The notes beneath the pieces were generated by a model. It ran no database searches. It was not told the DNA's origin and saw only the letters and a list, made by a program, of their open reading frames with translations. A stretch of 64,000 bases of DNA. Origin: Obrimoposthia wandeli (Eukaryota). Below are positions 9,672-58,781 of this stretch, one piece after another. The stretch lies in NCBI GenBank assembly GCA_977020255.1, contig CDROCS010000506.1, forward strand, positions 2,170,001 to 2,234,000. Direction: 5' to 3'. Each line of letters begins with the position of its first letter. The first letter of the stretch is position 1. The position numbers were made by a program, and so were the translations under genes.

Positions 9672-10346
9672 ATGTTAGCGCTACCTATGTGGCTACAGGG
9701 AGTTATTTTGATATTACGATCAATCGTCGCGCTTATGTGTCTGTTCAGCTCATTCGCTTATTCTGCTGTATTCAAATCAGAGAATACTGCGTTATTAAGA
9801 GAGTGGTTAGGGGGGATTCATCAATCAACTAACGATATTATTCAGGGCCGCAGAGTTAATATCGGCCTGCAAATATTACCTATTTGGCAAGACCGTATTG
9901 ATGGTGAATGGCTGTATATTGAAAGTCGTATTGTTGACTCGCCAAACAAGCCATTCCGCCAGCGTATTTTGCAACTTGTTGCTACACCCAACGGTTTAAT
10001 TCGTTTATACAGTTACACTATCCCACGTGCATCTGATTTTGCTGGTGCTTATTATTTCCCGCAAGTATTAGCTAGCTTGACTCAGTCTCAGCTTAGTATC
10101 AGTAATAACTGTGAGTTACTTATTGAGTTAAAAGTGACGAGTACTTTTGTCGGAGAAACGGATGCTGATTCTTGTTTATCACGTAAAGGCAGGGCATTGT
10201 TAACAACGTTTTTCGCGGTATCAGAAGTGAATATTTCATTTTTAGATGGCGGTTATGACAAGTTTGGCAATTTACTACCAGGTCGACTCGAAGAGCCTGT
10301 CACATTTTTAAAGTTAGAAGATTATACCTCGCGTGAGGATAATTAA
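9672..10346 (+). CDS. CpcT/CpeT-like (bilin lyase fold) protein with a signal-peptide-like N-terminus; start uncertain
   Basis: PIW.DR.DG.WLY.E....P.KP.RQR motif typical of CpcT/CpeT; SSFAYS-A resembles a signal peptidase site. Confidence 0.6.
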   Translation: MLALPMWLQGVILILRSIVALMCLFSSFAYSAVFKSENTALLREWLGGIHQSTNDIIQGRRVNIGLQILPIWQDRIDGEWLYIESRIVDSPNKPFRQRILQLVATPNGLIRLYSYTIPRASDFAGAYYFPQVLASLTQSQLSISNNCELLIELKVTSTFVGETDADSCLSRKGRALLTTFFAVSEVNISFLDGGYDKFGNLLPGRLEEPVTFLKLEDYTSREDN

Positions 10347-12100: not shown

Positions 12101-14278
12101 TTATGTTGTGGGCTGTTCTGGGATCAAAATAACACCTTGATAACCAGTAAGCGTAATACTGTCGGTAACTTCACCTAGGCTGCCATCGGCATTTAGTCTG
12201 CGGTATTGACCGGGTAATTTAACGGTTTTTGTTGCTTGCTGACTGAATGTTTTATTTTGACCATTTCGGTCTGTGTAATAGAGGATTAACCCTTGTTGAT
12301 ATTGTCGTGCGATCACAGCTTCTAGCGGTACCGCATTTTGCCATGGCAGCGTAAGAGGGGGTTTGCGGTAGAGATAAAACCAATGGCTTGGAGTGATTGT
12401 TAATGTTTGCTTATTCAGGGTGAGCTGCGCATCGCTGCTTAATGCCAGTGGCTTATTGGCTTTATCTAGATACTCAACGGCAGGGTAATTAACGGGTGCT
12501 GAAATTGGTTTGCCAAGGTCCTGTTGTAGCATCGCAGTTGGTTGATAAGCCACATTGTTAGGAATACCGGGTTGGTAGTAATTATCTTTACGGGTATTTT
12601 TACTGGAGTAATAGAAACTATGATTCCATTGCTGATAAAAATCTAATTTTGGATTATTTAGCAGGTAAAATATAGCCAGGTTAGTCGTCTGGTCATGTTG
12701 CCAGTTTACCTTACTATCTCCTTGCCAGCGTACCTTTCCACCTTTTCGCATATGCGCCATTAATACACTGCGTTTACCTTGGGCACTTAATACAAAGTGC
12801 TCCCAGCGTTGTAGTAATCCACGTTGTTGAGATAATCCGAGACTGGGATGGATATAATCTTCTCGGACAAAGAAATTAAAACCATCGGTTAAAGGCTGTA
12901 AGCCGGGTTCAGTGAACAGGTTTAAATCTGATATGTTGGCGCCAATCCAAGCTTGTTGATTAGTTTTTTGTAAACCGCTATTAAAAGTACTGAGGCTTTG
13001 CCAATAAAATTTACCTGCTTGGCGAACTGGATATTGCAGTTCGAGTACCTTTCCGCCCTTCGTCGTCGGAAATTGGCTGCTGTTGGGAACGCGAAATAGG
13101 GAATCGTTATAAGCACCTTGATAACCTTGTTGTTGCCAGTGCTGCTGTAAATAATTGTTTAACAAGGTACGGTTTTCAGCTGAGAATAAGTTTGTATAAC
13201 ACAGTGCAGATCTTTCATCCCACATTCTGCCTAATGGTATCAATCGGGCTTGATACGGTAAACGTGCGCTGGCATTAGGGTTTAAGCGTTGTTGGTATTC
13301 ACGATCATCAATGTAGCCATCGTGATTATTATCGTTAAGCGGATCCCAACCGGGGATAGTGACATAGTGCTTATTTGATATCTGGCTAAACTGATACCAA
13401 CTCGGTAAACGCAGTTTGGTCAGCGTTACATCACTGGTTAGATTGTTAAGGGTTATTTTAAAAACAAAAAAACGCGCGTTTTTGATGTTTAGTTGGCCAC
13501 CTAACTGCTTGCTGAGTGGCGCTGAAATAGCGACTCTAGGCCAATTTTTTGGCTGTGACCAACGGTTGTTTAATGTTATTGATAACGGTTGTGTTAATAG
13601 CGGTTGCCAGCCGTACTCCAATGTATTGTAGGAGATATCCTGGGTGGCATAAGAAATGGTTATACTGGCGGCTGCTAATTGTTGACCACTGAACTCAATA
13701 TCCAGCCCGGTTAATTTTTCGGATGAAAAGAGATATAAGGTTTGGTTATTTTGTAATGCTAACTCTTGTTGCATGGGCATGCTAATACGTTTTATTTTCC
13801 CTTGTGTGGTGACCGTCGAAACTTGCTGGACAGCAACAAACTCGGGTATGCCGTAGAGTGGGGTATGAGATCCGTGAAGGTTGTTGGGTATTTCAAATTG
13901 GGTATCATGCTGAAAGTGTAGAAATAGTGATTCATAATCTTGCTTTTTTTCGGTTATCCAATAACGCAGTTGTTGTTCTTTAGCCCCCATCTGCCAATCC
14001 AGCTTTTGGCTGTACATATAACCTAGTTGAGTGATTTTTTTAGCTTGGTATTGGTCATAGCTACCACCAATACTGATGTCAGCATGGTCATCTTCCCATT
14101 GTGATACGGCACTAGTAGAGCTAAATTGTTGCTGCCATTGCGGAGCTGTTGCGGCTTGCTGTTGACCGTTTATCACCCACGCGGTCCCTGCGGAAGGGTA
14201 TACCTGGGCGACTGCGCTGGATATTGAAACAATGAATATCATTAGCCCCACGCAGTTGCCGACAATCGCGTTATACAT
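12101..14278 (-). CDS. Exported 725-aa protein, putative glycoside-hydrolase-like (GHL15-type C-terminus)
   Basis: Signal-peptide-like N-terminus; C-terminal ARQYQQGLILY...TVKLPGQYRRLNADGSL...ITLTGYQGVIL resembles hypothetical glycosyl hydrolase family 15; DxDxDG-like Ca loop DNNHDGYID. Confidence 0.5.
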   Translation of the reverse strand: MYNAIVGNCVGLMIFIVSISSAVAQVYPSAGTAWVINGQQQAATAPQWQQQFSSTSAVSQWEDDHADISIGGSYDQYQAKKITQLGYMYSQKLDWQMGAKEQQLRYWITEKKQDYESLFLHFQHDTQFEIPNNLHGSHTPLYGIPEFVAVQQVSTVTTQGKIKRISMPMQQELALQNNQTLYLFSSEKLTGLDIEFSGQQLAAASITISYATQDISYNTLEYGWQPLLTQPLSITLNNRWSQPKNWPRVAISAPLSKQLGGQLNIKNARFFVFKITLNNLTSDVTLTKLRLPSWYQFSQISNKHYVTIPGWDPLNDNNHDGYIDDREYQQRLNPNASARLPYQARLIPLGRMWDERSALCYTNLFSAENRTLLNNYLQQHWQQQGYQGAYNDSLFRVPNSSQFPTTKGGKVLELQYPVRQAGKFYWQSLSTFNSGLQKTNQQAWIGANISDLNLFTEPGLQPLTDGFNFFVREDYIHPSLGLSQQRGLLQRWEHFVLSAQGKRSVLMAHMRKGGKVRWQGDSKVNWQHDQTTNLAIFYLLNNPKLDFYQQWNHSFYYSSKNTRKDNYYQPGIPNNVAYQPTAMLQQDLGKPISAPVNYPAVEYLDKANKPLALSSDAQLTLNKQTLTITPSHWFYLYRKPPLTLPWQNAVPLEAVIARQYQQGLILYYTDRNGQNKTFSQQATKTVKLPGQYRRLNADGSLGEVTDSITLTGYQGVILIPEQPTT

Positions 14279-14951
14279 AGATCATATGCCTTACCCCATT
14301 GACGTATTTTGAGTGTCGCGATGGGTTGAGTGGACAATGGCTAACTAACTCACTGAGTAGGCGTTCGTGTTGGTCTTGGCATTTTAATTCCAGCAATACA
14401 TAGTCGCCCATTTTTCGTGAGCGGGTGGTATTGGGTTTACTCCAATAGCGTTGATCGTATACTTCCATATTACTATCGAGCGTTGCGCGTATGCGGCCAC
14501 AAAAACTGACCAAGTACTGGCGCTTATAGCGGCCGAGTAATATGGGATAAGTTTGGCTATCCCATTCTGACAGAGCTTGCAGCGATAATTGTGATTGGCA
14601 GTGTTTAATATGTTCTGACCAAGTGATATTGGGATCATCAAAGTTCAACTGTAAAGGATAAATAACTTTGCAGCCTTTACCGCTGCGGCGTTGTTTAAAT
14701 TCTAACTGGGCTTTACCCGCGTTAGTAATATCGTGATACCAACGTATACGCATTTTGTTACGGTTACTTATGCCTGTGAGGTTTTCAGCAAAGCACGCCA
14801 TTTGGTGACTATCAAAATACACGCTATTCACATGTTGGTCTGGGTGATGTTGACGAAACCCCATCGATGACAGCCTTAACCAAGACAGCATATACTCTAA
14901 ACGGTTAAGCGGGATTGGTATTTTAATTTCAAAGCGATAGTCTGGGGTCAT
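14271..14951 (-). CDS. VTC-domain (CYTH/triphosphate tunnel) polyphosphate-polymerase-like protein
   Basis: RFEIK, SVYFD, RNKMRIRWY, LEFKQR, YKRQY, RATLD, LELK, SKY motifs. Confidence 0.8.
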   Translation of the reverse strand: MTPDYRFEIKIPIPLNRLEYMLSWLRLSSMGFRQHHPDQHVNSVYFDSHQMACFAENLTGISNRNKMRIRWYHDITNAGKAQLEFKQRRSGKGCKVIYPLQLNFDDPNITWSEHIKHCQSQLSLQALSEWDSQTYPILLGRYKRQYLVSFCGRIRATLDSNMEVYDQRYWSKPNTTRSRKMGDYVLLELKCQDQHERLLSELVSHCPLNPSRHSKYVNGVRHMIYV

Positions 14952-17563
14952 TTTGGTTTGTCCGAGCGCATGGAGCTAGTGTAAAGTTTCTTCACGTTTA
15001 ATTTCTTCGCCGTCTGTTGCTGGCCATCTAAAACCAGTACGTTATTTTTTTGCAGCATGCTGATGTTACTGCAGTTATGACAGCTAAAGTTAGATGCTTG
15101 CAGGTTGGCACCACCAAAGAAGGGCTTCTTCATATAAGCCATGAACAGGTAATGTTTAATATCGACACCAGATACATTATCAGCAACTACCCGTGAACCA
15201 TCTTTGGCGACAATACCAAACGCCGCGCTATTCACTTGGATATTGGCAGCATCGACATCACTGTGTTCTCCGGCTGAAATGGCTTTGTCACGGATCTGAC
15301 TAAATTGACTATTGCGTACTATGATGCGAGAGCCACTAATATCGATAGCGTCCCCTCCCGATCTAACGCCCACCGTATTGAATTGACTGTCACTGATCTT
15401 GCCCTGACAAAAATCACAATCAAAACCATCGGAGTAAGCATTCTCGATGCTTAACTTGGTTAAATTAAAGGTACTGTTGATCATGTTCAGTGAATCTTCA
15501 GAGCGATTGTCACGTAGGGTGATATCACTAGCATTAAGATCCACATCGTACATGTATAAGGCGCCTCTTGGTTGCCAGTTGCCTTGTTTAGGACTAGCGC
15601 TTTTTGCCATATCTAAATGTTGGACTGTTGATTTACTGCCCGAACCGAATACCGCAATACCTTGCCATGTTTTTTTACTACTTGCGGTTAGGGTTACTGG
15701 CTGTTGCGCGCTACCTTCGATATCAAGTTGGCCAAAAATCAGTAAGCCTGCACGTTTACTAAAGCTGATGTTGGTATTGGCGGGTATAAATACCCGTGTA
15801 TCGGCGGGCGTGATCAGGTAATCATTTATTTGCCAGTCACCGGGTTTAAAATACCAACCATCCTGTTGTCTTTGGATAAAGTCATAAGCAGCCAGTACAT
15901 CGGCTTCTTGTTGCATTGGTAATGGACGCGGTAGGAAGCTAGTGGCTGATTCACCCAGTTGGAAACGATATGTTTGTAGTTTTTTGTCACCCTGACGACT
16001 AAGTAATTTAATGCTGTAGGCATCATCATGATCAATAATCAAACTGCCGTCGGTTTGATTAGCGGCGAGGGTAAAGGGTAACTCAGGTGCATCCGCTAAA
16101 CTAATTTCACTGCCCCATTTATCACTGACAATTAAATCGATGATCGAGACAGGTGCTTGGTTATTATTATGTAATTGCAGTTGTTTTTGATTATTGCTAT
16201 AGCGGAATTTACTCGCTAAATCCCAAGGTAGCTCGGCACTAAAGCTATCGACATGACGGTGCCATGCGCTTGGCATTGTCGGTAAATCACGACAACCTTG
16301 CGCTAAACACTGTGCGTGCGCAGTTAAACTATCAAAGCTATACCCTTGCAGTAGTGGTGAACCATGCTGCATTTTTTTGAGTACTTGCTGTTGTAGTACA
16401 GCTAGCTGTTCGGGTAGTTGCTTGCTATTGACTAACGTGAGTAAATGATTGAGTGCCTGATTGTATTGGTCTTTGACTTTATTATCAGCAAGCATGGCTT
16501 TAATCAGTGGGAATTGGTCACTGACGGGCTGTAATAAAATTTTATCAGGTACCGGAGATAATGCTTCATCACTTTGGATCGGTTCAAGTTTAGCTGTATG
16601 CGGGTTGTAGTAAAAACGTAAGTTATTCCAACTAAAGGCATGCCAGGCAGACCAGAGATCGACGGTCGCTATGTATTGGCCTAGCTTGCGGCTATCAAAG
16701 ACATCGGATGCACTGCGACGACCATTGAGAAAGTCACTGAGTAAGGTGAGTGCGATCTTGCGCTGCTGATTTAGGCTTGGATTATTGATGGCATCACTTT
16801 GTTGAAATACTTTAGGACGGAAGACCTTATGTAGTTGGTTATTTTTTTCATTAAGCGTGGCTTGTTCTAATTTAACAATCAGGCCTTCGGTACGGTTGTT
16901 ATTGGCGAGTAATTCTTTGGCAAATACTTCTTCCAATAACATTAAACCCCATGGTGTTCCGTTCACGGTGAGATTCACCGGGATATGTTGCGGGGAAATA
17001 ATATCGAAGCCAGCGATGTCTAAGGTTTTACTAAATAACAAGGGCGCGTGATTACCACGTACATTAGGGCTGAGTAGGGCAAATCTTTTTACTTTTAGTA
17101 GACTGCTTTTACCTTTTAATTCGACCCGTAACGACCAACGCTGTGGTCCTGCTACATGATCGAGTAAATCACCTTGTAGGCGCACTTTGGCGTTGTATTT
17201 ATTTTCTTCATAGCTAACGCTGGCTTTTACTTCAGCGCGACGTTCAGGGATCTGACCTTGTTGTAATGCTTGTTTGCGATCGGCAACTATGCGCATCCAA
17301 TCTTGATATTTAATGTCTAGTTGTAACTGAGGAATATCAGTATCGGCATTTAGGTATCTCATTGGCGCATCAATTAGCGCATCGATTAATTGAGCTTGTT
17401 TCGCGCTGTTATCAGTACTGTGAGCGACAAAGCCATGCTCAACCAACATGTTTTTAATACTACTTGGTGATGGCGTGACAAAGAATAAAACCAGTAATAT
17501 CCCGCCAATCGTATACCAGCGGTCACGTTTAGCAAACCGCGACCGGTTCTCGGATAGGATCAT
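14948..17563 (-). CDS. Membrane-anchored CotH-kinase-family protein with a C-terminal right-handed beta-helix
   Basis: N-terminal TM; KVRLQGDLLDH...RWSLRV, VNG.PWGLM.LEE, WHAFSWNNLRFYYNP.T.KLEPI..D; beta-helix repeats SEDSLN, DGFDCD, GDAIDISGS, DKAISAGE. Confidence 0.7.
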   Translation of the reverse strand: MILSENRSRFAKRDRWYTIGGILLVLFFVTPSPSSIKNMLVEHGFVAHSTDNSAKQAQLIDALIDAPMRYLNADTDIPQLQLDIKYQDWMRIVADRKQALQQGQIPERRAEVKASVSYEENKYNAKVRLQGDLLDHVAGPQRWSLRVELKGKSSLLKVKRFALLSPNVRGNHAPLLFSKTLDIAGFDIISPQHIPVNLTVNGTPWGLMLLEEVFAKELLANNNRTEGLIVKLEQATLNEKNNQLHKVFRPKVFQQSDAINNPSLNQQRKIALTLLSDFLNGRRSASDVFDSRKLGQYIATVDLWSAWHAFSWNNLRFYYNPHTAKLEPIQSDEALSPVPDKILLQPVSDQFPLIKAMLADNKVKDQYNQALNHLLTLVNSKQLPEQLAVLQQQVLKKMQHGSPLLQGYSFDSLTAHAQCLAQGCRDLPTMPSAWHRHVDSFSAELPWDLASKFRYSNNQKQLQLHNNNQAPVSIIDLIVSDKWGSEISLADAPELPFTLAANQTDGSLIIDHDDAYSIKLLSRQGDKKLQTYRFQLGESATSFLPRPLPMQQEADVLAAYDFIQRQQDGWYFKPGDWQINDYLITPADTRVFIPANTNISFSKRAGLLIFGQLDIEGSAQQPVTLTASSKKTWQGIAVFGSGSKSTVQHLDMAKSASPKQGNWQPRGALYMYDVDLNASDITLRDNRSEDSLNMINSTFNLTKLSIENAYSDGFDCDFCQGKISDSQFNTVGVRSGGDAIDISGSRIIVRNSQFSQIRDKAISAGEHSDVDAANIQVNSAAFGIVAKDGSRVVADNVSGVDIKHYLFMAYMKKPFFGGANLQASNFSCHNCSNISMLQKNNVLVLDGQQQTAKKLNVKKLYTSSMRSDKPK

Positions 17564-17565
17564 AG

Positions 17566-18288
17566 TTACACTCCAGCAATATTATGTTGCTCGAGTAATG
17601 ATAACGATACGCCGGGATAGTGGACTTTTAACGCTTCAAACAAGTTATCTAAATGCTCACTGTTGGCGAACGAAATGAAGAAAGTGGCTTCAATTAGTTT
17701 TTGTTCATGGTCGTACCGTCGTAGATCGCTGCGGGTGGTATGTTTGGTAAATATTTCTTGTAGTTCACTGATACTGATTTCATTCTCACCTTCATGTTGG
17801 TGGCGTAATGATAAGAAAATACCTTTTTCACCATGATGCTCTGTTTTCGAGTGTTTGATAAAACTCACTAATATTAATGTGGTAATACAAGCTGAAATGG
17901 CTGCGATGGTTTGTCCTGCGCCAAGGGCAACAGCGATACCAATATTTAAAAATAAATAAAGCAGTTCTTCAGGCTCTTTAATTGGGGTTCGGAAACGGAC
18001 GATTGATAATGCCCCTACAAGACCGAGAGCCAGTGCCAGAGACGCTTTTACAATCGAAATAATAAGGATCACAGTCAACATCAGTAGCGGAAATAAACGG
18101 GAGAAATCTTGGCGATTACAAAACGAAGAGGCGAAATAGCGAAAGTGTGCACCAATAACCCAAGACAGGGCAAAACCTATGACTAAGTTGAGTAACAAAG
18201 GCGCAAGCATGACACTGGCATAAGGGAAGAACATATCCTGAACTTCATTCGGTAAAAATGCCGCTATAGCTGGATTAACTGGTTCCAC
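17566..18288 (-). CDS. DUF4956-family membrane protein (MgtC-like TM bundle plus ACT-like C-terminus)
   Basis: SLALALGLVGALSIVRFRTPIKEPEE signature; GTG start with AAGGAG SD. Confidence 0.85.
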   Translation of the reverse strand: MEPVNPAIAAFLPNEVQDMFFPYASVMLAPLLLNLVIGFALSWVIGAHFRYFASSFCNRQDFSRLFPLLMLTVILIISIVKASLALALGLVGALSIVRFRTPIKEPEELLYLFLNIGIAVALGAGQTIAAISACITTLILVSFIKHSKTEHHGEKGIFLSLRHQHEGENEISISELQEIFTKHTTRSDLRRYDHEQKLIEATFFISFANSEHLDNLFEALKVHYPGVSLSLLEQHNIAGV

Positions 18289-18531
18289 AATAGACTCTCC
18301 TTGTATGTGGGTTAAGCATAAATATAACTATTTTTTATGCTGTTATGATTAAGTGTAGGCAATATTTATTCGATTGGAGAGGCTGTTAATATTGTTTGTA
18401 TAAATTTTGTTGTGGTTAGAGTTTGTTTACTACCTCGATAACCTGTTAAAATTACCGATTGCGTTATTTACAGCATTACCGCTATTTAGAGCATAGTCCT
18501 AAACGACTACTCAAACTGAGATCGAATCATC

Positions 18532-35101: not shown

Positions 35102-35162
35102 CGTCCGTCATAAGTGTTATGTTATATTATAACGCTTGTTTACTGACCCTCGTGTTTATACC

Positions 35163-37199
35163 ATGTCTTTATTGTTATTTCTGAGTATTGCTACGCTTTT
35201 CCTTGGCCCTTATTTATGTAAATTTGTCGGCTCTAAATCCGATCGTTTTGCTTTCTTCGACAGCTTTATTTTTGTCTCTATTGGCGGTTTGGTATTATTC
35301 CATATCTTGCCTGAGCTGCTGGAAAGTGGCGGTATTGCTGTGCTTGGATTAATGCTGGTTGGCTTATTTGGCCCTGGCATGGTCGAAAAAATATTCCATA
35401 AAGTCGCTAAACAAACCCATTCGGTTACCTTGATATTAGGTGTGTTGGGTTTAGTCTTGCACGCGATCACCGATGGTGGCGCGCTGGCTATTGAAGACGA
35501 TCAGACCGCTTATTTGTTAGCTATTGGTGTGGTACTACATCGTTTCCCTGTTGGTTTGACCGTGTGGTGGTTGTTACGACCGCATTATGGTCGCGCGCTA
35601 CCTTTAGCTGTATTAACGGCAATGTCAGTGGCAACGGCTGCTGGTGCTTGGTTGGGCGGTGAACTGATTGCCCACGATAGCGGTAATTGGTTGATCTGGT
35701 TCCAAGCGTTAGTAATGGGCTCTATCTTACATGTGGTATTTCACCAGCCTTATAAACAAGAACACGGTAAAGAAACTCAGCGTGATAAATTTGCCGCCGG
35801 TACTGGTAGCTTAATTGGCGCTATGTGTTTACTTGCGGTATTACTGCCACATTGGTTAGGTTATGCGCCACATAATCATGATGCCCCAGCAACCGTAGCG
35901 TCACAGACTGTTACCTCAACAGAATTACACGCTGATGAGCACGCTGGACATGATGACCGTGTTGGACATGATGACAATCATGAAGGGCACGATGACCATG
36001 CAGGACATGATGACCATGCAGGGCACGATGACCATGTTGGACATGATGACCATGTTGGACATGATGACCATGTTGGACATGATGACAATCATGAAGGGCA
36101 CGATGACCAAACAGAAAATGCTGATCACGCAGGACACGAACACAGCAGTGAAACAGCAGAAACCTTACTACGTTTCGTGAGCTTATCACTGCATGCTGCA
36201 CCAGCATTATTATTCGCTTATATCCTTACTTGGCTGATTAATTTTGTGAAACCAGCCTTTAATATGGTCGGTCAACTGCGTAGTAGTAGCCCTGTTGCTG
36301 GCGCCTTAAAAGGCACATTAATTGGTTTACCACTACCGATTTGCATTCCTGATGCATCGGGTATGTATAAGCAATTGATTAAAGCGGGTTGTGGTTCTGC
36401 ATTAGCGGTTTCATTTTTAGTGGCATCGCCTGTTATTGGTTTTGATGCGCTACTTATTTCATTACCGCTGTTGGGTGTTGAGTGGGTTGGTATACGTTTA
36501 GTGATGGCTGTGATCTTAGCGGTGACCTTAGGTCTGCTTATTGGCTCATTATTCAAAAAACATGACTTGAATAACGATACTTGCGCGACGACGGCAGAGT
36601 TAGAGGCGTCAACGTCACGCCTTAAGCGTGCATTTGAACATGGTTTCTCACACCTTATTGATCATACTGCACCTTGGGTATTATTTGGTTTGATTGCGGC
36701 GGCGACATTTACGCCAACCATTGGCTGGGAGTTCTTACAGCAAGAACCTTGGTTACAGGTTGTATTGGCTATTCTAATTGCCTTACCGTTCCACTTCTGT
36801 GCAACTGGTATTACGCCTGTGCTAGCCATTATGTTGGTTGCTGGTGTTTCACCTGGTGCGGTTGTGGCCTTTAGTTTAGTGGGTCCAACGCTGAACTTAG
36901 ATTTGTATCGCTTCATTAAAGATAATCAAGGTAAGCATATTGCGATGGCTGTCGTGATGGCGATTGTTACTGTCGCGCTACTGCTAGGCTTAGGCATTAT
37001 GTATTGGGTACCTGAGTTACCTAAACCTTGGTTAACGTTAGCGCCGCATTGGCAAGATGATTGGTGGCGTTATGTTAGTTTAGCGATAGTGACAGTGCTA
37101 TTTGCGATTAGTATTTTACGTCGTGGAGCACGTAGCTTCATGCTGGAGTTATTACCGCATAGCTTTAAAAATGCGAAACCACATCATCATCACCATTAG
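35163..37199 (+). CDS. Metal-efflux-type permease (SO_0444-like; ZIP-like N-half plus ArsP/DUF318-like C-half) with a His-rich loop
   Basis: LFHILPEL, LHAITDG, LHRFPVG, LHVVFH; multi-TM; C-terminal HHHHH. Confidence 0.75.
   Translation: MSLLLFLSIATLFLGPYLCKFVGSKSDRFAFFDSFIFVSIGGLVLFHILPELLESGGIAVLGLMLVGLFGPGMVEKIFHKVAKQTHSVTLILGVLGLVLHAITDGGALAIEDDQTAYLLAIGVVLHRFPVGLTVWWLLRPHYGRALPLAVLTAMSVATAAGAWLGGELIAHDSGNWLIWFQALVMGSILHVVFHQPYKQEHGKETQRDKFAAGTGSLIGAMCLLAVLLPHWLGYAPHNHDAPATVASQTVTSTELHADEHAGHDDRVGHDDNHEGHDDHAGHDDHAGHDDHVGHDDHVGHDDHVGHDDNHEGHDDQTENADHAGHEHSSETAETLLRFVSLSLHAAPALLFAYILTWLINFVKPAFNMVGQLRSSSPVAGALKGTLIGLPLPICIPDASGMYKQLIKAGCGSALAVSFLVASPVIGFDALLISLPLLGVEWVGIRLVMAVILAVTLGLLIGSLFKKHDLNNDTCATTAELEASTSRLKRAFEHGFSHLIDHTAPWVLFGLIAAATFTPTIGWEFLQQEPWLQVVLAILIALPFHFCATGITPVLAIMLVAGVSPGAVVAFSLVGPTLNLDLYRFIKDNQGKHIAMAVVMAIVTVALLLGLGIMYWVPELPKPWLTLAPHWQDDWWRYVSLAIVTVLFAISILRRGARSFMLELLPHSFKNAKPHHHHH
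35940..36107 (+). repeat. In-frame minisatellite of nine GHDD units (7 x 18 bp plus 2 x 21 bp)
   Basis: Encodes H[AV]GHDD, RVGHDD and NHEGHDD; 168 nt. Confidence 0.92.
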
Positions 37200-57198: not shown

Positions 57199-57479
57199 GT
57201 TGGCGGGTGTTAGCGGTGATTCCCTTATAATAAGCATTACTTATGGGACTAATAAGTAATAGTCATTAGTTCTTTCAGCATCAAATTATCATAATGCCTC
57301 CCAACAGATAGCGTCGCATGGATTTGCTGATAGCGGTTGGCTTTGGTTTTGTTATTTTGGTATTAGATTATTGATATACCTTCAAAATCATTGTCGTTGT
57401 GCCAATGGAAATGGCGATGATTTCGCCACTGATGAACGTTAGGTATCAGTGAACTTTGATTAGACTTAGGGTATACATT

Positions 57480-58046
57480 ATGAATAAATCTCTTTTGGCA
57501 ACGATTGTCTCTGCTTCTCTATTTTTAGCAGGCTGTTCTTCTTCGGGTGACTCAAGCAACGGTGGACCGGGTGATCCTGTTATTCCTGATATCGATGCAT
57601 CACCAGAATGGGGACTTGATATTGGTGATGCACCTGATTGGGGGTTAACTGATCCGGATTTCGGACAACCAATGCCTTCAATTCCAGATAGATTGCCACC
57701 AATATGGGGGGGACCTGGAATGCCTGTGATTGATAATGGACCTGAGGCCAGTTACACCATTTCAGGAAGTACAATCACTGATGCTAATGGCAACATTTTC
57801 AACATTACAGAAGTGGAGTGGATTGGCCAACATATGATAGTTCAAGATCAAGAGGGTAATGAATACCGCGTAGATGTTCGTCGCCAAGGTGAGTTTGAGG
57901 GGGATTTTGTCGTCATGATTAATGGAAATGCGATCATCATTGGCGGTGATACCGTTCAAGGTGGGCCAAAACCACTGATGGAAAATAGTGGGCGCACAAT
58001 TGATCGTAATGCTATCCGTGATTCAATTCGCTCTCATTTAAAATAA
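57480..58046 (+). CDS. Lipoprotein with Pro/Gly/Asp-rich PxWG repeats
   Basis: Lipobox LAGC; PEWG, PDWG, PDFG, PIWG; beta-rich middle; C-terminal helix IDRNAIRDSIRSHLK. Confidence 0.75.
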   Translation: MNKSLLATIVSASLFLAGCSSSGDSSNGGPGDPVIPDIDASPEWGLDIGDAPDWGLTDPDFGQPMPSIPDRLPPIWGGPGMPVIDNGPEASYTISGSTITDANGNIFNITEVEWIGQHMIVQDQEGNEYRVDVRRQGEFEGDFVVMINGNAIIIGGDTVQGGPKPLMENSGRTIDRNAIRDSIRSHLK

Positions 58047-58106: not shown

Positions 58107-58781
58107 ATGAAAACTATTTCAATTACTTGCAGCGCAATGATGCTCTGTACTTCAGCGTTTGCTGGAATTGATCTATCAATTGAAAAGGATGTTATAGAGA
58201 TCGGTGTTACCGCGACGGTAACTGATAATACTTATTTATATATTGGTGGAGACAGCAACGAATGGCTCGGGATTGGTGTTGGTTACCATCAATTTGTTAA
58301 TTCGAATTGGAAGTTGGATTCTTATTATGAGTTCAGCTTGGAGGATGATTGGCTTATGGGGGAGTTGGCTGGTGTTGATGGCGTTAAAACAAAAACACAC
58401 TTTGTTGACCTTTCTGCAATCCGATTTTTCGACGGGTACTCTGCCAAGTTTGGGGTGACAAGCGAATTTGTCCGCAATGGTTTCACTTGGATGACGGTTG
58501 ATGATGCGAATAAGTATTCGGCCTATTTCGCCGCAGCTAAGTACTTCCAGCATGCTTATGTTATTGGTAAATTTGAGTTTCACTATGCAGAAGACAAATC
58601 GGATATGATTGATTTCAACCAAGGGACCGCGAATGAATGGGAAATATCGATAGGTACTATGCGTCCGATTTTACATATCTATCCGTATGCGAAAGTATCT
58701 GCTTTTAGCCCTAACGGTACTTATTATGGCATGGATGACATTGATTACAGTTGGACTATTGGAGGGCGGATTTCATTCTAG
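58107..58781 (+). CDS. Predicted outer-membrane beta-barrel protein
   Basis: Signal peptide ending AFA, amphipathic beta-strand pattern, C-terminal WTIGGRISF (terminal Phe). Confidence 0.7.
   Translation: MKTISITCSAMMLCTSAFAGIDLSIEKDVIEIGVTATVTDNTYLYIGGDSNEWLGIGVGYHQFVNSNWKLDSYYEFSLEDDWLMGELAGVDGVKTKTHFVDLSAIRFFDGYSAKFGVTSEFVRNGFTWMTVDDANKYSAYFAAAKYFQHAYVIGKFEFHYAEDKSDMIDFNQGTANEWEISIGTMRPILHIYPYAKVSAFSPNGTYYGMDDIDYSWTIGGRISF

What the first reader, a model, noticed from the sequence alone, without database searches (positions are those of the whole stretch)
12101..18288. Coupled DUF4956 - CotH/beta-helix - VTC - GHL15 operon: candidate split-VTC polyphosphate export and surface-glycan phosphorylation system
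Seen: four co-oriented genes inserted between yigI and recQ with tight coupling (DUF4956 stop 2 bp before the CotH start; CotH/VTC ATGA overlap at 14948-14951; VTC/GHL15 8-bp overlap). Known: eukaryotic VTC polymerases join a CYTH-fold catalytic domain to a TM channel and thread polyP across the membrane as it is made; CotH proteins are atypical kinases acting outside the cytoplasm; right-handed beta-helices often bind polysaccharides. Inference: the VTC protein plus the DUF4956 TM bundle form a split bacterial VTC that delivers polyP to the periplasm. There the anchored CotH-beta-helix enzyme would use it as phosphoryl donor for a glycan or envelope protein that the exported GHL15-like protein binds or trims. 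This would explain how an extracytoplasmic kinase works without periplasmic ATP. DUF4956/VTC/CotH co-occurrence is familiar, but I know of no established function, and the beta-helix fusion plus GHL15 gene point to a glycan substrate.
Basis: partly seen in the sequence, partly recalled or inferred. Interest (0 to 1): 0.8.

Follow-up and report, generated by a model that had tools for sequence, protein, structure and literature searches.

The report
Bacterial VTC–DUF4956–CotH envelope phosphate operon
A Moritella operon joins a cytoplasmic polyphosphate-polymerase-like enzyme, a membrane protein and a periplasmic kinase-like/beta-helix enzyme; this trio is conserved across many phyla, is uncharacterised, and probably supplies phosphate chemistry outside the cytoplasm.

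Summary
The four co-oriented, overlapping minus-strand genes exist exactly as described, between yigI and recQ in a Moritella housekeeping region. Three domain calls hold: DUF4956, CotH-like plus right-handed beta-helix, and VTC. The GHL15 call does not hold. The 725-aa protein has no Pfam or NCBIfam match. It belongs to a rare family (34 clusters), and its model looks like a secreted TIM-barrel glycosidase.

The conserved unit is the first three genes only. They sit in the same order in at least 49 of 64 well-flanked loci spanning many phyla. The glycosidase-like gene joins them only in Moritella.

The VTC protein keeps every Vtc4 catalytic-tunnel residue, including the catalytic lysine. DUF4956 is a 5-TM MgtC-like protein, not a homologue of the VTC channel domain. 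The CotH-like domain is periplasmic. It keeps the metal-binding Asn and Asp but has Ala/Gly at the canonical catalytic Asp position, next to an invariant His.

Twenty of 79 related loci carry exported pyrophosphatases or metallophosphoesterases beside the trio. That independently suggests a phosphoanhydride outside the cytoplasm.

Polyphosphate export is plausible but unproven. A glycan target has only indirect support. The trio is already reported as a Pel accessory module in Gram-positives, with no known function.

The parts
18289..18531 (.). Divergent intergenic region shared with recQ; presumed operon promoter. The RBS GGAGAG lies 5 nt before the TTG/GTG start.
   Evidence: Sequence read. 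A weak sigma-70-like site on the minus strand at 18389-18361 is not above shuffle expectation. No Pho box and no Rfam match.
17566..18288 (-). DUF4956 membrane protein, 240 aa. Predicted N-out, about 5 TM, MgtC-like. An invariant SIVRFRTxIKEPEEL motif lies on the cytoplasmic loop after TM3. The C-terminal soluble domain is cytoplasmic and is reported as ACT-like in the streptococcal homologue.
   Evidence: Pfam PF16316 E 5.5e-16. Invariant residues from A4. Topology from hydropathy and charge. Weak MgtC hits in 38 of 42 members and no DUF202 hit. PMC12345266 for the ACT/MgtC description.
14948..17563 (-). 871-aa periplasmic, membrane-anchored enzyme with four parts: N-terminal TM anchor (aa 17-36), CotH-like kinase fold (aa ~75-435), beta-sandwich (aa ~440-535) and right-handed beta-helix (aa ~560-850).
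   Evidence: AF2 model with pLDDT 87.9 and pTM 0.87. Foldseek: 5jd9 at E 1e-10, and GH87, alginate lyase, AlgG and PL6 for the beta-helix. The family profile matches 5jd9 at E 1e-7. Positive N-tail, single TM and three close Cys pairs.
16259..17341 (-). CotH-like domain. Invariant H136, S144, R169, E211, H308, N314 and R316 (all 86/86) and D332 (85/86). The canonical catalytic Asp position is A309 (Ala, Gly or Ser across the family).
   Evidence: Alignment to B. cereus CotH. Column counts over 86 family members. B. subtilis D228 and D251 are required for activity (PMC7821199).
15014..15886 (-). Right-handed beta-helix domain with a dense set of invariant acidic and basic residues (D690, D712, D715, D717, D738, D741, D759, K760, E766, K787, D788, K812, K813). 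This looks like a second active or binding centre.
   Evidence: conservation; model; fold matches to polysaccharide-active beta-helices. Relatives carry PF13229.
14271..14951 (-). VTC-domain protein of 226 aa with a triphosphate-tunnel fold. No TM segment or signal peptide, so it is taken to be cytoplasmic. It carries the complete Vtc4-type catalytic tunnel.
   Evidence: Pfam PF09359 E 3.5e-27. 25 invariant residues in A3. Profile match to Vtc2, Vtc4 and Vtc3 at E 7e-11 to 4e-7, with K10 aligned to the Vtc4 RQTTKYW lysine. No hydrophobic segment.
12101..14278 (-). 725-aa secreted protein with a signal peptide. It models as a TIM-barrel glycosidase-like protein with flanking beta-sandwich domains and an EF-hand-like Ca loop (aa 312-327). 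It is a Moritella-specific fourth gene.
   Evidence: No Pfam or NCBIfam hit. Only 34 relatives among 5.8 billion clusters. AF2 pLDDT 81.7. Foldseek hits to GH13, GH66 and GH168 at E 2e-8 to 1e-5 with low TM-scores. Linked to the trio only in Moritella.

Best explanation
The conserved unit is a three-protein system that spans the inner membrane. Inferred step 1: the cytoplasmic VTC-type tunnel enzyme polymerises phosphate from ATP into polyphosphate. Inferred step 2: the chain, or its terminal phosphoryl groups, is handed to the MgtC-like DUF4956 protein. Its invariant basic/acidic loop lies on the cytoplasmic face, and its cytoplasmic C-terminal domain may gate the process. Inferred step 3: on the periplasmic side, the membrane-anchored CotH-like/beta-helix enzyme receives the phosphate donor. 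It uses or processes the donor on an extracytoplasmic polymer, most likely a glycan bound by the beta-helix. The invariant His308 beside the missing catalytic Asp may act as base or phospho-carrier. In Moritella, a secreted TIM-barrel glycosidase-like protein has been translationally coupled to the trio, probably to trim the same polymer. Shown here: gene order and coupling, domain folds, active-site conservation, topology, and conservation across phyla. Inferred: polyphosphate synthesis, membrane passage, the donor role, and the glycan target.
For: The trio occurs in the same order with 0-4 bp junctions in at least 49 of 64 well-flanked loci. These come from Gammaproteobacteria, Deltaproteobacteria, Planctomycetota, Anaerolineae, Bacteroidota and KSB1. 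The VTC family keeps K10, R68, R70, E84, K86, Y142, R144, R155, E188, K190, S214 and K215, which align with the Vtc4 catalytic-tunnel residues. The CotH/beta-helix protein has a positively charged N-tail, one TM and three close Cys pairs, so it is periplasmic, where ATP is absent. It keeps the metal ligands N314 and D332. Beside the trio, six loci carry lipoprotein family-I pyrophosphatases. Sixteen (two of them the same loci) carry exported metallophosphoesterases, 20 of 79 loci in all. P0095 fuses DUF4956, a TM anchor, CotH and the beta-helix in a topologically consistent order. Glycan links come from several directions: beta-helix fold matches to GH87, AlgG and PL6, ConA-like domains fused to the outward-facing N-terminus of DUF4956, and the trio embedded in an EPS cluster on plasmid pNP95 and in Gram-positive Pel loci (PMC7112168). 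Deleting DUF4956 or CotH alters Pel level and aggregation in S. intermedius (PMC12345266).
Against: No biochemical data exist for any bacterial VTC-domain protein in the searched literature. DUF4956 has no detectable similarity to the VTC channel domain or to any solved structure, and MgtC-type proteins are not known channels. No VTC-DUF4956 fusion was found among the top 150 of 6634 representatives. Six well-flanked loci have DUF4956 and CotH without a nearby VTC gene. The streptococcal VTC deletion had no reported phenotype (PMC12345266). The CotH-like domain lacks the canonical catalytic Asp, so it may not be a phosphotransferase at all. The bacterial VTC keeps one Glu (E8) of the hydrolase-type ExExK motif where Vtc4 has Thr. 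The 64-kb window contains no glycan-synthesis genes.
Confidence: 0.4

Rival explanations
1. Exported polyphosphate is itself the product, forming a periplasmic or surface phosphate and cation reserve analogous to the acidocalcisome lumen. The CotH-like/beta-helix protein is then a non-kinase handler that receives, anchors, measures or cleaves the chain. The exported phosphatases recycle the chain to phosphate.
For: The VTC active site is intact. The canonical catalytic Asp is lost from the CotH-like domain. The beta-helix carries many invariant Asp residues that could bind polyP through divalent cations. Exported pyrophosphatases and metallophosphoesterases sit beside the trio. Most gammaproteobacterial loci are bare three-gene operons with no glycan genes.
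Against: The invariant H308, N314, R316 and D332 pocket looks catalytic rather than merely binding. The association with EPS loci in Firmicutes, the glycosidase-like fourth gene here, and the ConA-like fusions all point to a carbohydrate partner.
Confidence: 0.2
2. There is no export. DUF4956 is a membrane sensor or regulator whose cytoplasmic ACT-like domain reads a metabolite made or consumed by the VTC enzyme (triphosphate, polyP or a nucleotide). It then controls the periplasmic CotH-like/beta-helix enzyme, which modifies or cleaves an exopolysaccharide through its beta-helix.
For: DUF4956 resembles MgtC, which is a regulator and not a transporter (PMC12345266). The DUF4956-CotH pairing is tighter than the pairing with VTC: six loci lack VTC, and P0095 is a DUF4956-CotH fusion. 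The streptococcal VTC deletion is silent, while the DUF4956 and CotH deletions shift Pel levels in opposite directions (PMC12345266). The beta-helix matches epimerases, lyases and hydrolases.
Against: This does not explain why exported pyrophosphatases and metallophosphoesterases recur beside the trio. It also does not explain why a kinase-like metal site is kept in a compartment without ATP.
Confidence: 0.2
3. The large protein is a conventional ATP-dependent CotH protein kinase acting on envelope proteins, as in spore coats. VTC and DUF4956 serve unrelated phosphate homeostasis.
For: The CotH fold match and the NCBI naming of relatives as 'CotH kinase family protein'.
Against: The catalytic Asp equivalent to B. 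subtilis D228, whose mutation inactivates CotH (PMC7821199), is Ala, Gly or Ser in 80 of 86 family members and never Asp among the residues listed. The domain is periplasmic, where ATP is lacking. The tight coupling across phyla argues against unrelated functions.
Confidence: 0.08
4. The adjacency is fortuitous, or one or more ORFs are not real genes.
For: None found.
Against: All four ORFs have conserved homologues under purifying selection, with 25 or more invariant residues each. The trio is syntenic in dozens of distant taxa.
Confidence: 0.01

Closest known systems
Eukaryotic VTC polyphosphate polymerase/translocase (yeast Vtc4/Vtc3/Vtc1; PDB 3g3q, 7ytj, 8i6v)
   Same: It has the triphosphate-tunnel catalytic domain, and every catalytic-tunnel residue is conserved, including the K200 equivalent. 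It is genetically coupled to a multi-pass membrane protein. The product is presumed to be delivered to the non-cytosolic side.
   Different: There is no SPX domain. The catalytic domain is a separate soluble protein. The membrane partner is MgtC-like DUF4956, not the DUF202-type VTC transmembrane domain. One ExExK glutamate (E8) is retained where Vtc4 has Thr. An obligatory periplasmic CotH-like partner is present. Polymerase activity is untested.
Bacillus CotH spore-coat Ser/Thr kinase (PDB 5jd9/5jda)
   Same: The atypical kinase fold (Foldseek E 1e-10, TM 0.66; profile E 1e-7). The Asn and Asp metal ligands are conserved, with identical 18-residue spacing.
   Different: The canonical catalytic Asp is replaced by Ala or Gly, with an invariant His just before it. 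The Pfam score sits only at the cut-off. The protein is anchored in the inner membrane facing the periplasm, is fused to a beta-sandwich and a beta-helix, and comes from a non-sporulating Gram-negative host.
Accessory module of Gram-positive Pel loci: cotH, polyphosphate polymerase, DUF4956 and DUF4832 glycosidase (S. intermedius SIR_1594-1591; PMC7112168, PMC12345266)
   Same: The same three protein families are present, plus a TIM-barrel glycosidase-type fourth gene in one operon. The CotH protein is extracytoplasmic.
   Different: No pel or other EPS genes lie in the 64-kb window or in most of the 79 related loci. That contrasts with the published statement that the trio is not found outside Pel loci. 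CotH is fused to a beta-helix rather than FN3. The fourth protein has no DUF4832 or any other Pfam match. The gene order differs.
MgtC/SapB/YhiD family membrane proteins
   Same: A multi-pass TM domain followed by a cytoplasmic ACT-type domain. Weak but consistent Pfam MgtC hits occur in 38 of 42 family members.
   Different: The scores fall below the MgtC gathering threshold. The invariant SIVRFRTxIKEPEEL loop was seen in this DUF4956 set and was not compared with MgtC. MgtC has no known link to VTC or CotH.
Synthase-dependent exopolysaccharide systems (e.g. alginate Alg8/Alg44 with periplasmic AlgG and AlgL)
   Same: The logic is similar: a cytoplasmic-face polymerase, an inner-membrane partner, a periplasmic right-handed beta-helix modifying enzyme (AlgG is among the fold matches) and an accessory depolymerase-like protein.
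   Different: The predicted polymer is inorganic. There is no glycosyltransferase, outer-membrane porin or c-di-GMP receptor in the operon.

Membership tests
VTC domain / Vtc4-type polyphosphate polymerase | Match to the Pfam VTC domain (PF09359) above its gathering score | tested here: met
   95.9 bits against a cut-off of 23, E 3.5e-27, covering profile positions 10-234 of 235.
VTC domain / Vtc4-type polyphosphate polymerase | Catalytic lysine (Vtc4 K200) and basic/acidic tunnel residues (R264, R266, K281, R361, R373, E426, S457, K458; the Vtc4 numbering is recalled from the literature, not tool-derived) | tested here: met
   K10, R68, R70, K86, R144, R155, E188, S214 and K215 are invariant in 42 sequences. 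They align to the Vtc4 motifs RQTTKYW, HRLRWYG, VERK, YNR, VRISLD, LEVK and SKF.
VTC domain / Vtc4-type polyphosphate polymerase | Catalytic domain fused to the VTC transmembrane domain (DUF202), with an SPX domain in the complex | tested here: not met
   The 226-aa protein has no TM segment and only the VTC domain. The neighbouring membrane protein gives no DUF202 hit and no match to Vtc1, Vtc3 or Vtc4 chains.
VTC domain / Vtc4-type polyphosphate polymerase | ATP-dependent polyP synthesis | not testable with these tools
   This needs an enzyme assay. No bacterial VTC-domain protein has been characterised in the searched literature.
CotH kinase family (PF08757) | Pfam match and CotH fold | tested here: met
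   Pfam gives 23.8 bits, equal to the cut-off. The family profile matches 5jd9 at E 1e-7. Foldseek against 5jd9 gives E 1e-10 and TM 0.66.
CotH kinase family (PF08757) | Metal-binding Asp (B. subtilis D251) and the Asn of the catalytic loop | tested here: met
   D332 is present in 85 of 86 members and N314 in 86 of 86. They align to the B. cereus PWD and HN positions with the same 18-residue spacing.
CotH kinase family (PF08757) | Catalytic Asp (B. subtilis D228; the D228Q mutant is inactive) | tested here: not met
   The aligned position is A309: Ala 38, Gly 36, Ser 6, Thr 2, Met 2 of 86. The preceding H308 is invariant. This rests on a profile alignment at about 15% identity, anchored by the conserved flanking residues. 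D228 and D251 are from PMC7821199.
DUF4956 (PF16316) | Pfam match above the gathering score | tested here: met
   59.2 bits against a cut-off of 30.6, E 5.5e-16. All 42 aligned relatives match.
   No Pfam family at E <= 10 for the protein, and no GHL family for any of its 26 relatives. No NCBIfam match either.
(beta/alpha)8 glycoside hydrolases, fold level | TIM-barrel fold similar to known GH families, with acidic residues at strand ends | tested here: inconclusive
   The AF2 model has pLDDT 81.7. There are 451 PDB matches at E <= 1e-3, led by GH78, GH13, GH66 and GH168, but TM-scores are only 0.2-0.46. D392, E413, E473 and D529 are invariant. No catalytic pair could be assigned.
Right-handed parallel beta-helix (PF13229) | Beta-helix fold in the C-terminal third | tested here: met
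   The model has stacked strands over residues 563-845. Foldseek matches GH87, alginate lyase, GH28, AlgG and PL6. Relatives carry precomputed PF13229 hits.
Pel-locus accessory module (Gram-positive) | Contiguity with pelDEADAFG | tested here: not met
   49 of the 54 called window ORFs were scanned with Pfam. None is a glycosyltransferase or Pel-type protein.

The most novel reading that the evidence does not exclude
The trio is a prokaryotic, three-component counterpart of the VTC machine. A cytoplasmic tunnel polymerase feeds polyphosphate through an MgtC-like membrane protein to a periplasmic CotH-like enzyme. That enzyme has swapped its catalytic Asp for a His and uses the chain as phosphoryl donor for surface polymers. 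This would be a general answer to how kinase-fold enzymes work outside the cytoplasm without ATP, and it would add a PPK-independent route of bacterial polyphosphate synthesis.
Probability: 0.25. Interest if true: 0.85.

Novelty: new variant of a known kind. Interest (0 to 1): 0.6.

Why it matters
Bacterial polyphosphate synthesis is attributed to PPK1 and PPK2. A working VTC-type polymerase in bacteria would add a third route. Coupled to a membrane protein and an extracytoplasmic kinase-fold enzyme, it would also suggest where the eukaryotic 'make it and thread it across the membrane' mechanism came from. It would offer a phosphoryl donor for enzymes in the ATP-free periplasm. The module is widespread: at least 564 relatives of the large protein in one-genome-per-species data, and 6634 DUF4956 representatives. 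In streptococci it sits next to biofilm polysaccharide loci, where two of its genes affect aggregation. The stand-alone three-gene operons of culturable marine gammaproteobacteria give a clean, tractable system for testing the function.

Tried and rejected
- **GHL15 assignment.** Pfam at E <= 10 on all 27 family members, and NCBIfam on the window protein, gave nothing. The assignment is rejected.
- **Profile search for the 725-aa family.** A second search returned the same 34 proteins, so no bridge to a named family exists.
- **Single-sequence PDB searches.** The CotH-like protein found nothing and the VTC protein only a marginal Vtc2 hit (E 1.3). Profiles were needed (versus 26, 50).
- **DUF4956 profile against the PDB.** No match, so no sequence evidence ties it to Vtc1 or Vtc4 channels.
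- **VTC-DUF4956 fusion proteins.** None among the top 150 representatives. The long hits carry ConA-like or Sel1 N-terminal domains instead.
- **Exact-protein contig look-up for the window VTC.** It gave only contigs of 5.3 kb or less, which is useless for context.
- **hhalign against the Pseudobutyrivibrio CotH.** The CotH family profile gave no usable alignment. That protein's canonical D motifs were read by eye.
- **Regulatory signals.** No Pho box, no Rfam match, and the promoter/terminator scan was not above shuffle expectation.
- **Composition.** The profile shows no foreign-DNA signature.
- **Literature.** The original CotH structure paper (PMC4922149) is not held, so residue roles come from PMC7821199.
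- **Limits.** Both structure-prediction jobs went to the two large proteins. No model of DUF4956 or of a VTC-DUF4956 complex was made.

Full report
**Observation.**
The region holds four minus-strand ORFs: 17566-18288 (240 aa), 14948-17563 (871 aa), 14271-14951 (226 aa) and 12101-14278 (725 aa). There is a 2-bp gap (TAA-CT-ATG), an ATGA overlap at 14948-14951, and an 8-bp ATGTATAA overlap at 14271-14278.

Pfam gives DUF4956 (E 5.5e-16) for the first gene and VTC (E 3.5e-27) for the third. For the second it gives CotH at exactly the gathering score (23.8 bits). The fourth gets nothing, and NCBIfam adds nothing.

The flanks are a yigI-like 4HBT thioesterase with a rarD-like EamA gene on one side and recQ on the other. 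The rest of the window is housekeeping: lysA, dapF, xerC, uvrD, polA, engB, hemN, ntrBC-glnA, typA, recG, spoT and gmk. It contains no glycosyltransferase or EPS/LPS genes. Base composition is uniform. Homologues at 75-92% identity place the window in Moritella.

**The conserved unit is a trio, not a quartet.**
A scan of one genome per species with a profile of the 871-aa protein found at least 564 relatives, of which 79 loci were kept. I called ORFs in these loci and searched them with the window proteins.

- DUF4956 is present in 68 of the 79 loci and VTC in 61.
- The order is almost always DUF4956, then CotH/beta-helix, then VTC, with junctions of -4 to +2 bp.
- Of 64 loci with at least 2.5 kb on both sides, 49 have all three genes by strict calling, and two more (L030, L058) appear to have all three once my gene-calling losses are allowed for.
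- The taxa include Moritella, Pseudoalteromonas, Vibrio, Photobacterium, Colwellia, Endozoicomonas, Deltaproteobacteria, Planctomycetota, Anaerolineae, many Bacteroidota and KSB1.

No other neighbour is broadly conserved. The 725-aa gene follows VTC only in Moritella (L004-L006 and the window). Its 34 known relatives elsewhere (Endozoicomonas, Photobacterium and metagenomes) are stand-alone genes in unrelated contexts in the four places checked.

**VTC protein.**
Forty-two family members share 25 invariant residues. A profile of them matches yeast Vtc2, Vtc4 and Vtc3 (E 7e-11 to 4e-7). The alignment puts K10 on the lysine of the Vtc4 RQTTKYW motif. It puts R68/R70 on HRLRWYG, E84/K86 on VERK, Y142/R144 on YNR, R155 on VRISLD, E188/K190 on LEVK, and S214/K215 on SKF.

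From my knowledge of the Vtc4 structure work, these are the catalytic lysine K200 and the tunnel residues R264, R266, K281, R361, R373, E426, S457 and K458. One difference stands out. The bacterial family has RxExK, keeping one glutamate (E8) of the hydrolase-type ExExK motif, where Vtc4 has Thr.

The protein has no hydrophobic segment or signal peptide. It is therefore taken to be a cytoplasmic enzyme, and its conserved tunnel suggests it is active. The chemistry (polymerase versus phosphatase) is inferred, not shown.

**DUF4956.**
Hydropathy and charge over the family alignment predict four features:

- an acidic N-terminus outside the cytoplasm;
- about five TM helices;
- an invariant SIVRFRTxIKEPEEL loop on the cytoplasmic face;
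- a cytoplasmic C-terminal soluble domain.

The profile matches no solved structure. Thirty-eight of 42 members give weak MgtC hits (best E 5e-4) and none gives DUF202. This agrees with the MgtC-plus-ACT description of the streptococcal homologue (PMC12345266). 'Split VTC' is therefore an analogy of logic, not homology of the membrane part.

A full HMM search of 1.84 billion representatives found 6634 family members. None of the top 150 is fused to VTC. The longer ones carry ConA-like/3-keto-disaccharide-hydrolase or Sel1 domains at the outward-facing N-terminus. One protein, P0095, fuses DUF4956, a TM anchor, CotH and the beta-helix in exactly the gene order and a consistent topology.

**CotH-like/beta-helix protein.**
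The AF2 model (pLDDT 87.9, pTM 0.87) shows an N-terminal TM helix, a CotH-like domain, a beta-sandwich and a right-handed beta-helix. Foldseek gives B. cereus CotH at E 1e-10 (TM 0.66). For the beta-helix it gives GH87 glucanases, alginate lyase, GH28, AlgG epimerase and PL6 lyases.

The arginine- and lysine-rich N-tail, the single TM and three close cysteine pairs place the bulk of the protein in the periplasm.

In the profile alignment to B. cereus CotH, the Asn and Asp metal ligands (window N314 and D332) align with identical 18-residue spacing. The catalytic Asp position, however, is A309, directly after H308. Across 86 family members, H308, N314 and R316 are 86/86 and D332 is 85/86. Position 309 is Ala, Gly, Ser, Thr or Met in 84 of the 86 and never Asp among the residues listed.

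B. subtilis D228Q and D251A are inactive (PMC7821199). This family therefore fails one defining CotH feature and may use different chemistry. The CotH in the Pseudobutyrivibrio trio keeps the canonical Asp motifs, so the His variant is specific to the beta-helix-fused lineage. The beta-helix carries 13 invariant Asp, Glu and Lys residues, which suggests a second functional centre.

**Independent hint of extracytoplasmic phosphoanhydride.**
In 20 of the 79 loci, the genes beside the trio include one of two enzyme types. Six loci have family-I inorganic pyrophosphatases (Pfam E 4e-37; PDB E 2e-22). Sixteen loci, two of which also carry such a pyrophosphatase, have calcineurin-like metallophosphoesterases.

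All six pyrophosphatases begin with lipoprotein signal peptides. Most of the metallophosphoesterases start with a signal peptide, lipobox or TM anchor. Exported pyrophosphatases make sense only if pyro- or polyphosphate occurs outside the cytoplasm. This is the best new support for the export idea, but it is circumstantial and absent from the Moritella locus itself.

**Fourth gene.**
The 725-aa protein has a signal peptide and an EF-hand-like loop at residues 312-327. Its AF2 model (pLDDT 81.7) has beta-sandwich domains flanking a TIM barrel. Foldseek returns hundreds of glycoside hydrolases (GH78, GH13, GH66, GH168) at E 2e-8 to 1e-5, but with low TM-scores. It is glycosidase-like at fold level. 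GHL15 is not supported, and neither activity nor substrate is known.

**Literature.**
A cotH, polyphosphate polymerase, DUF4956 and DUF4832 gene set is reported as an accessory group of Gram-positive Pel loci (PMC7112168). In S. intermedius, the DUF4832 protein is an active glycosidase. Deleting DUF4956 or CotH halves aggregation and shifts Pel levels, while the VTC deletion showed no reported change in the aggregation or Pel assays. The authors state they did not find the trio outside Pel loci (PMC12345266). The present data show it is common outside them.

A Pseudobutyrivibrio plasmid carries the trio inside another EPS cluster, alongside a phosphodiester glycosidase. I found no biochemical study of a bacterial VTC-domain protein.

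**Verdict.**
The polymerase-type active site, the periplasmic location of the kinase-like enzyme and the exported phosphatases all fit export of polyphosphate.

Several findings weaken it:

- the membrane component is not VTC-like;
- the kinase-like domain is non-canonical;
- VTC is dispensable in the only genetic test, and is missing from some loci;
- the glycan target rests on fold and context only.

I put 0.4 on the export-and-use model. I put 0.2 on polyphosphate as the end product, 0.2 on a regulatory, non-export model and under 0.1 on a conventional protein kinase. It is a new variant of a known but uncharacterised module. Interest is 0.6.

Noticed in passing
window 13298-13345 (-), aa 312-327 of the 725-aa protein: There is a canonical EF-hand-like calcium loop (D-x-N-x-D-G-x-I-D-x-x-E pattern), largely invariant in the family. 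Weak EF-hand Pfam hits occur in up to 9 of 27 relatives. This fits an extracytoplasmic, Ca-stabilised protein.
   Followed up: partly
P0095 (metagenome protein, 1077 aa): This is a single polypeptide made of DUF4956, a TM anchor, a CotH-like domain and a beta-helix. It mirrors the gene order and predicted topology of the first two operon genes. Only one example was seen, so a sequencing frameshift cannot be excluded.
   Followed up: partly
L026:8108-8755, L028:8114-8761, L057:13245-13865, L062:13132-13737, L074:13090-13746, L078:15637-16251: Family-I inorganic pyrophosphatases with lipoprotein signal peptides lie beside the trio. Exported soluble-type pyrophosphatases are unusual in themselves.
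   Followed up: partly
L052:4784-13799, L053:4483-13392, L061, L072, L075, L076, L022: Several Bacteroidota loci and one Legionellales MAG locus carry two to four tandem CotH/beta-helix paralogues next to one DUF4956 gene. Often no VTC gene lies within 10 kb.
   Followed up: no
L083 (Pseudobutyrivibrio xylanivorans plasmid pNP95), 1-24450: The CotH-VTC-DUF4956 trio sits inside a plasmid-borne exopolysaccharide cluster with GT2, GT4, GT61, acyl- and pyruvyl-transferases, GH99-like proteins and a 'phosphodiester glycosidase'. This CotH keeps the canonical catalytic Asp motifs.
   Followed up: partly
P0236, P0238 (DUF4956 representatives, about 450-500 aa): These DUF4956 proteins have an N-terminal ConA-like/3-keto-disaccharide-hydrolase domain, predicted to face outward. 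This hints at a carbohydrate link for the membrane component.
   Followed up: no
window 9672-10346 (+): A CpeT/CpcT-family (DUF1001) protein (E 1e-22) is encoded between uvrD and the rarD-like gene. In cyanobacteria this family is a phycobilin lyase, and it is unexpected in a non-photosynthetic Moritella.
   Followed up: no
window 35136-37199 (+): This 687-aa protein has an ArsP_1 permease match over residues 344-619 only. The N-terminal ~340 residues have no Pfam match at E <= 1e-5.
   Followed up: no
window 57456-58046 (+) and 58107-58781 (+): Two adjacent ORFs of 196 and 224 aa have no Pfam match at E <= 1e-4.
   Followed up: no
L008-L024 (Pseudoalteromonas/Colwellia loci), e.g. L008:7670-9106 (-): In 13 loci a gene encoding an Lcl_C-domain protein (Legionella collagen-like C-terminal domain, E 1.6e-54) is divergently transcribed immediately upstream of the trio.
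   Followed up: no
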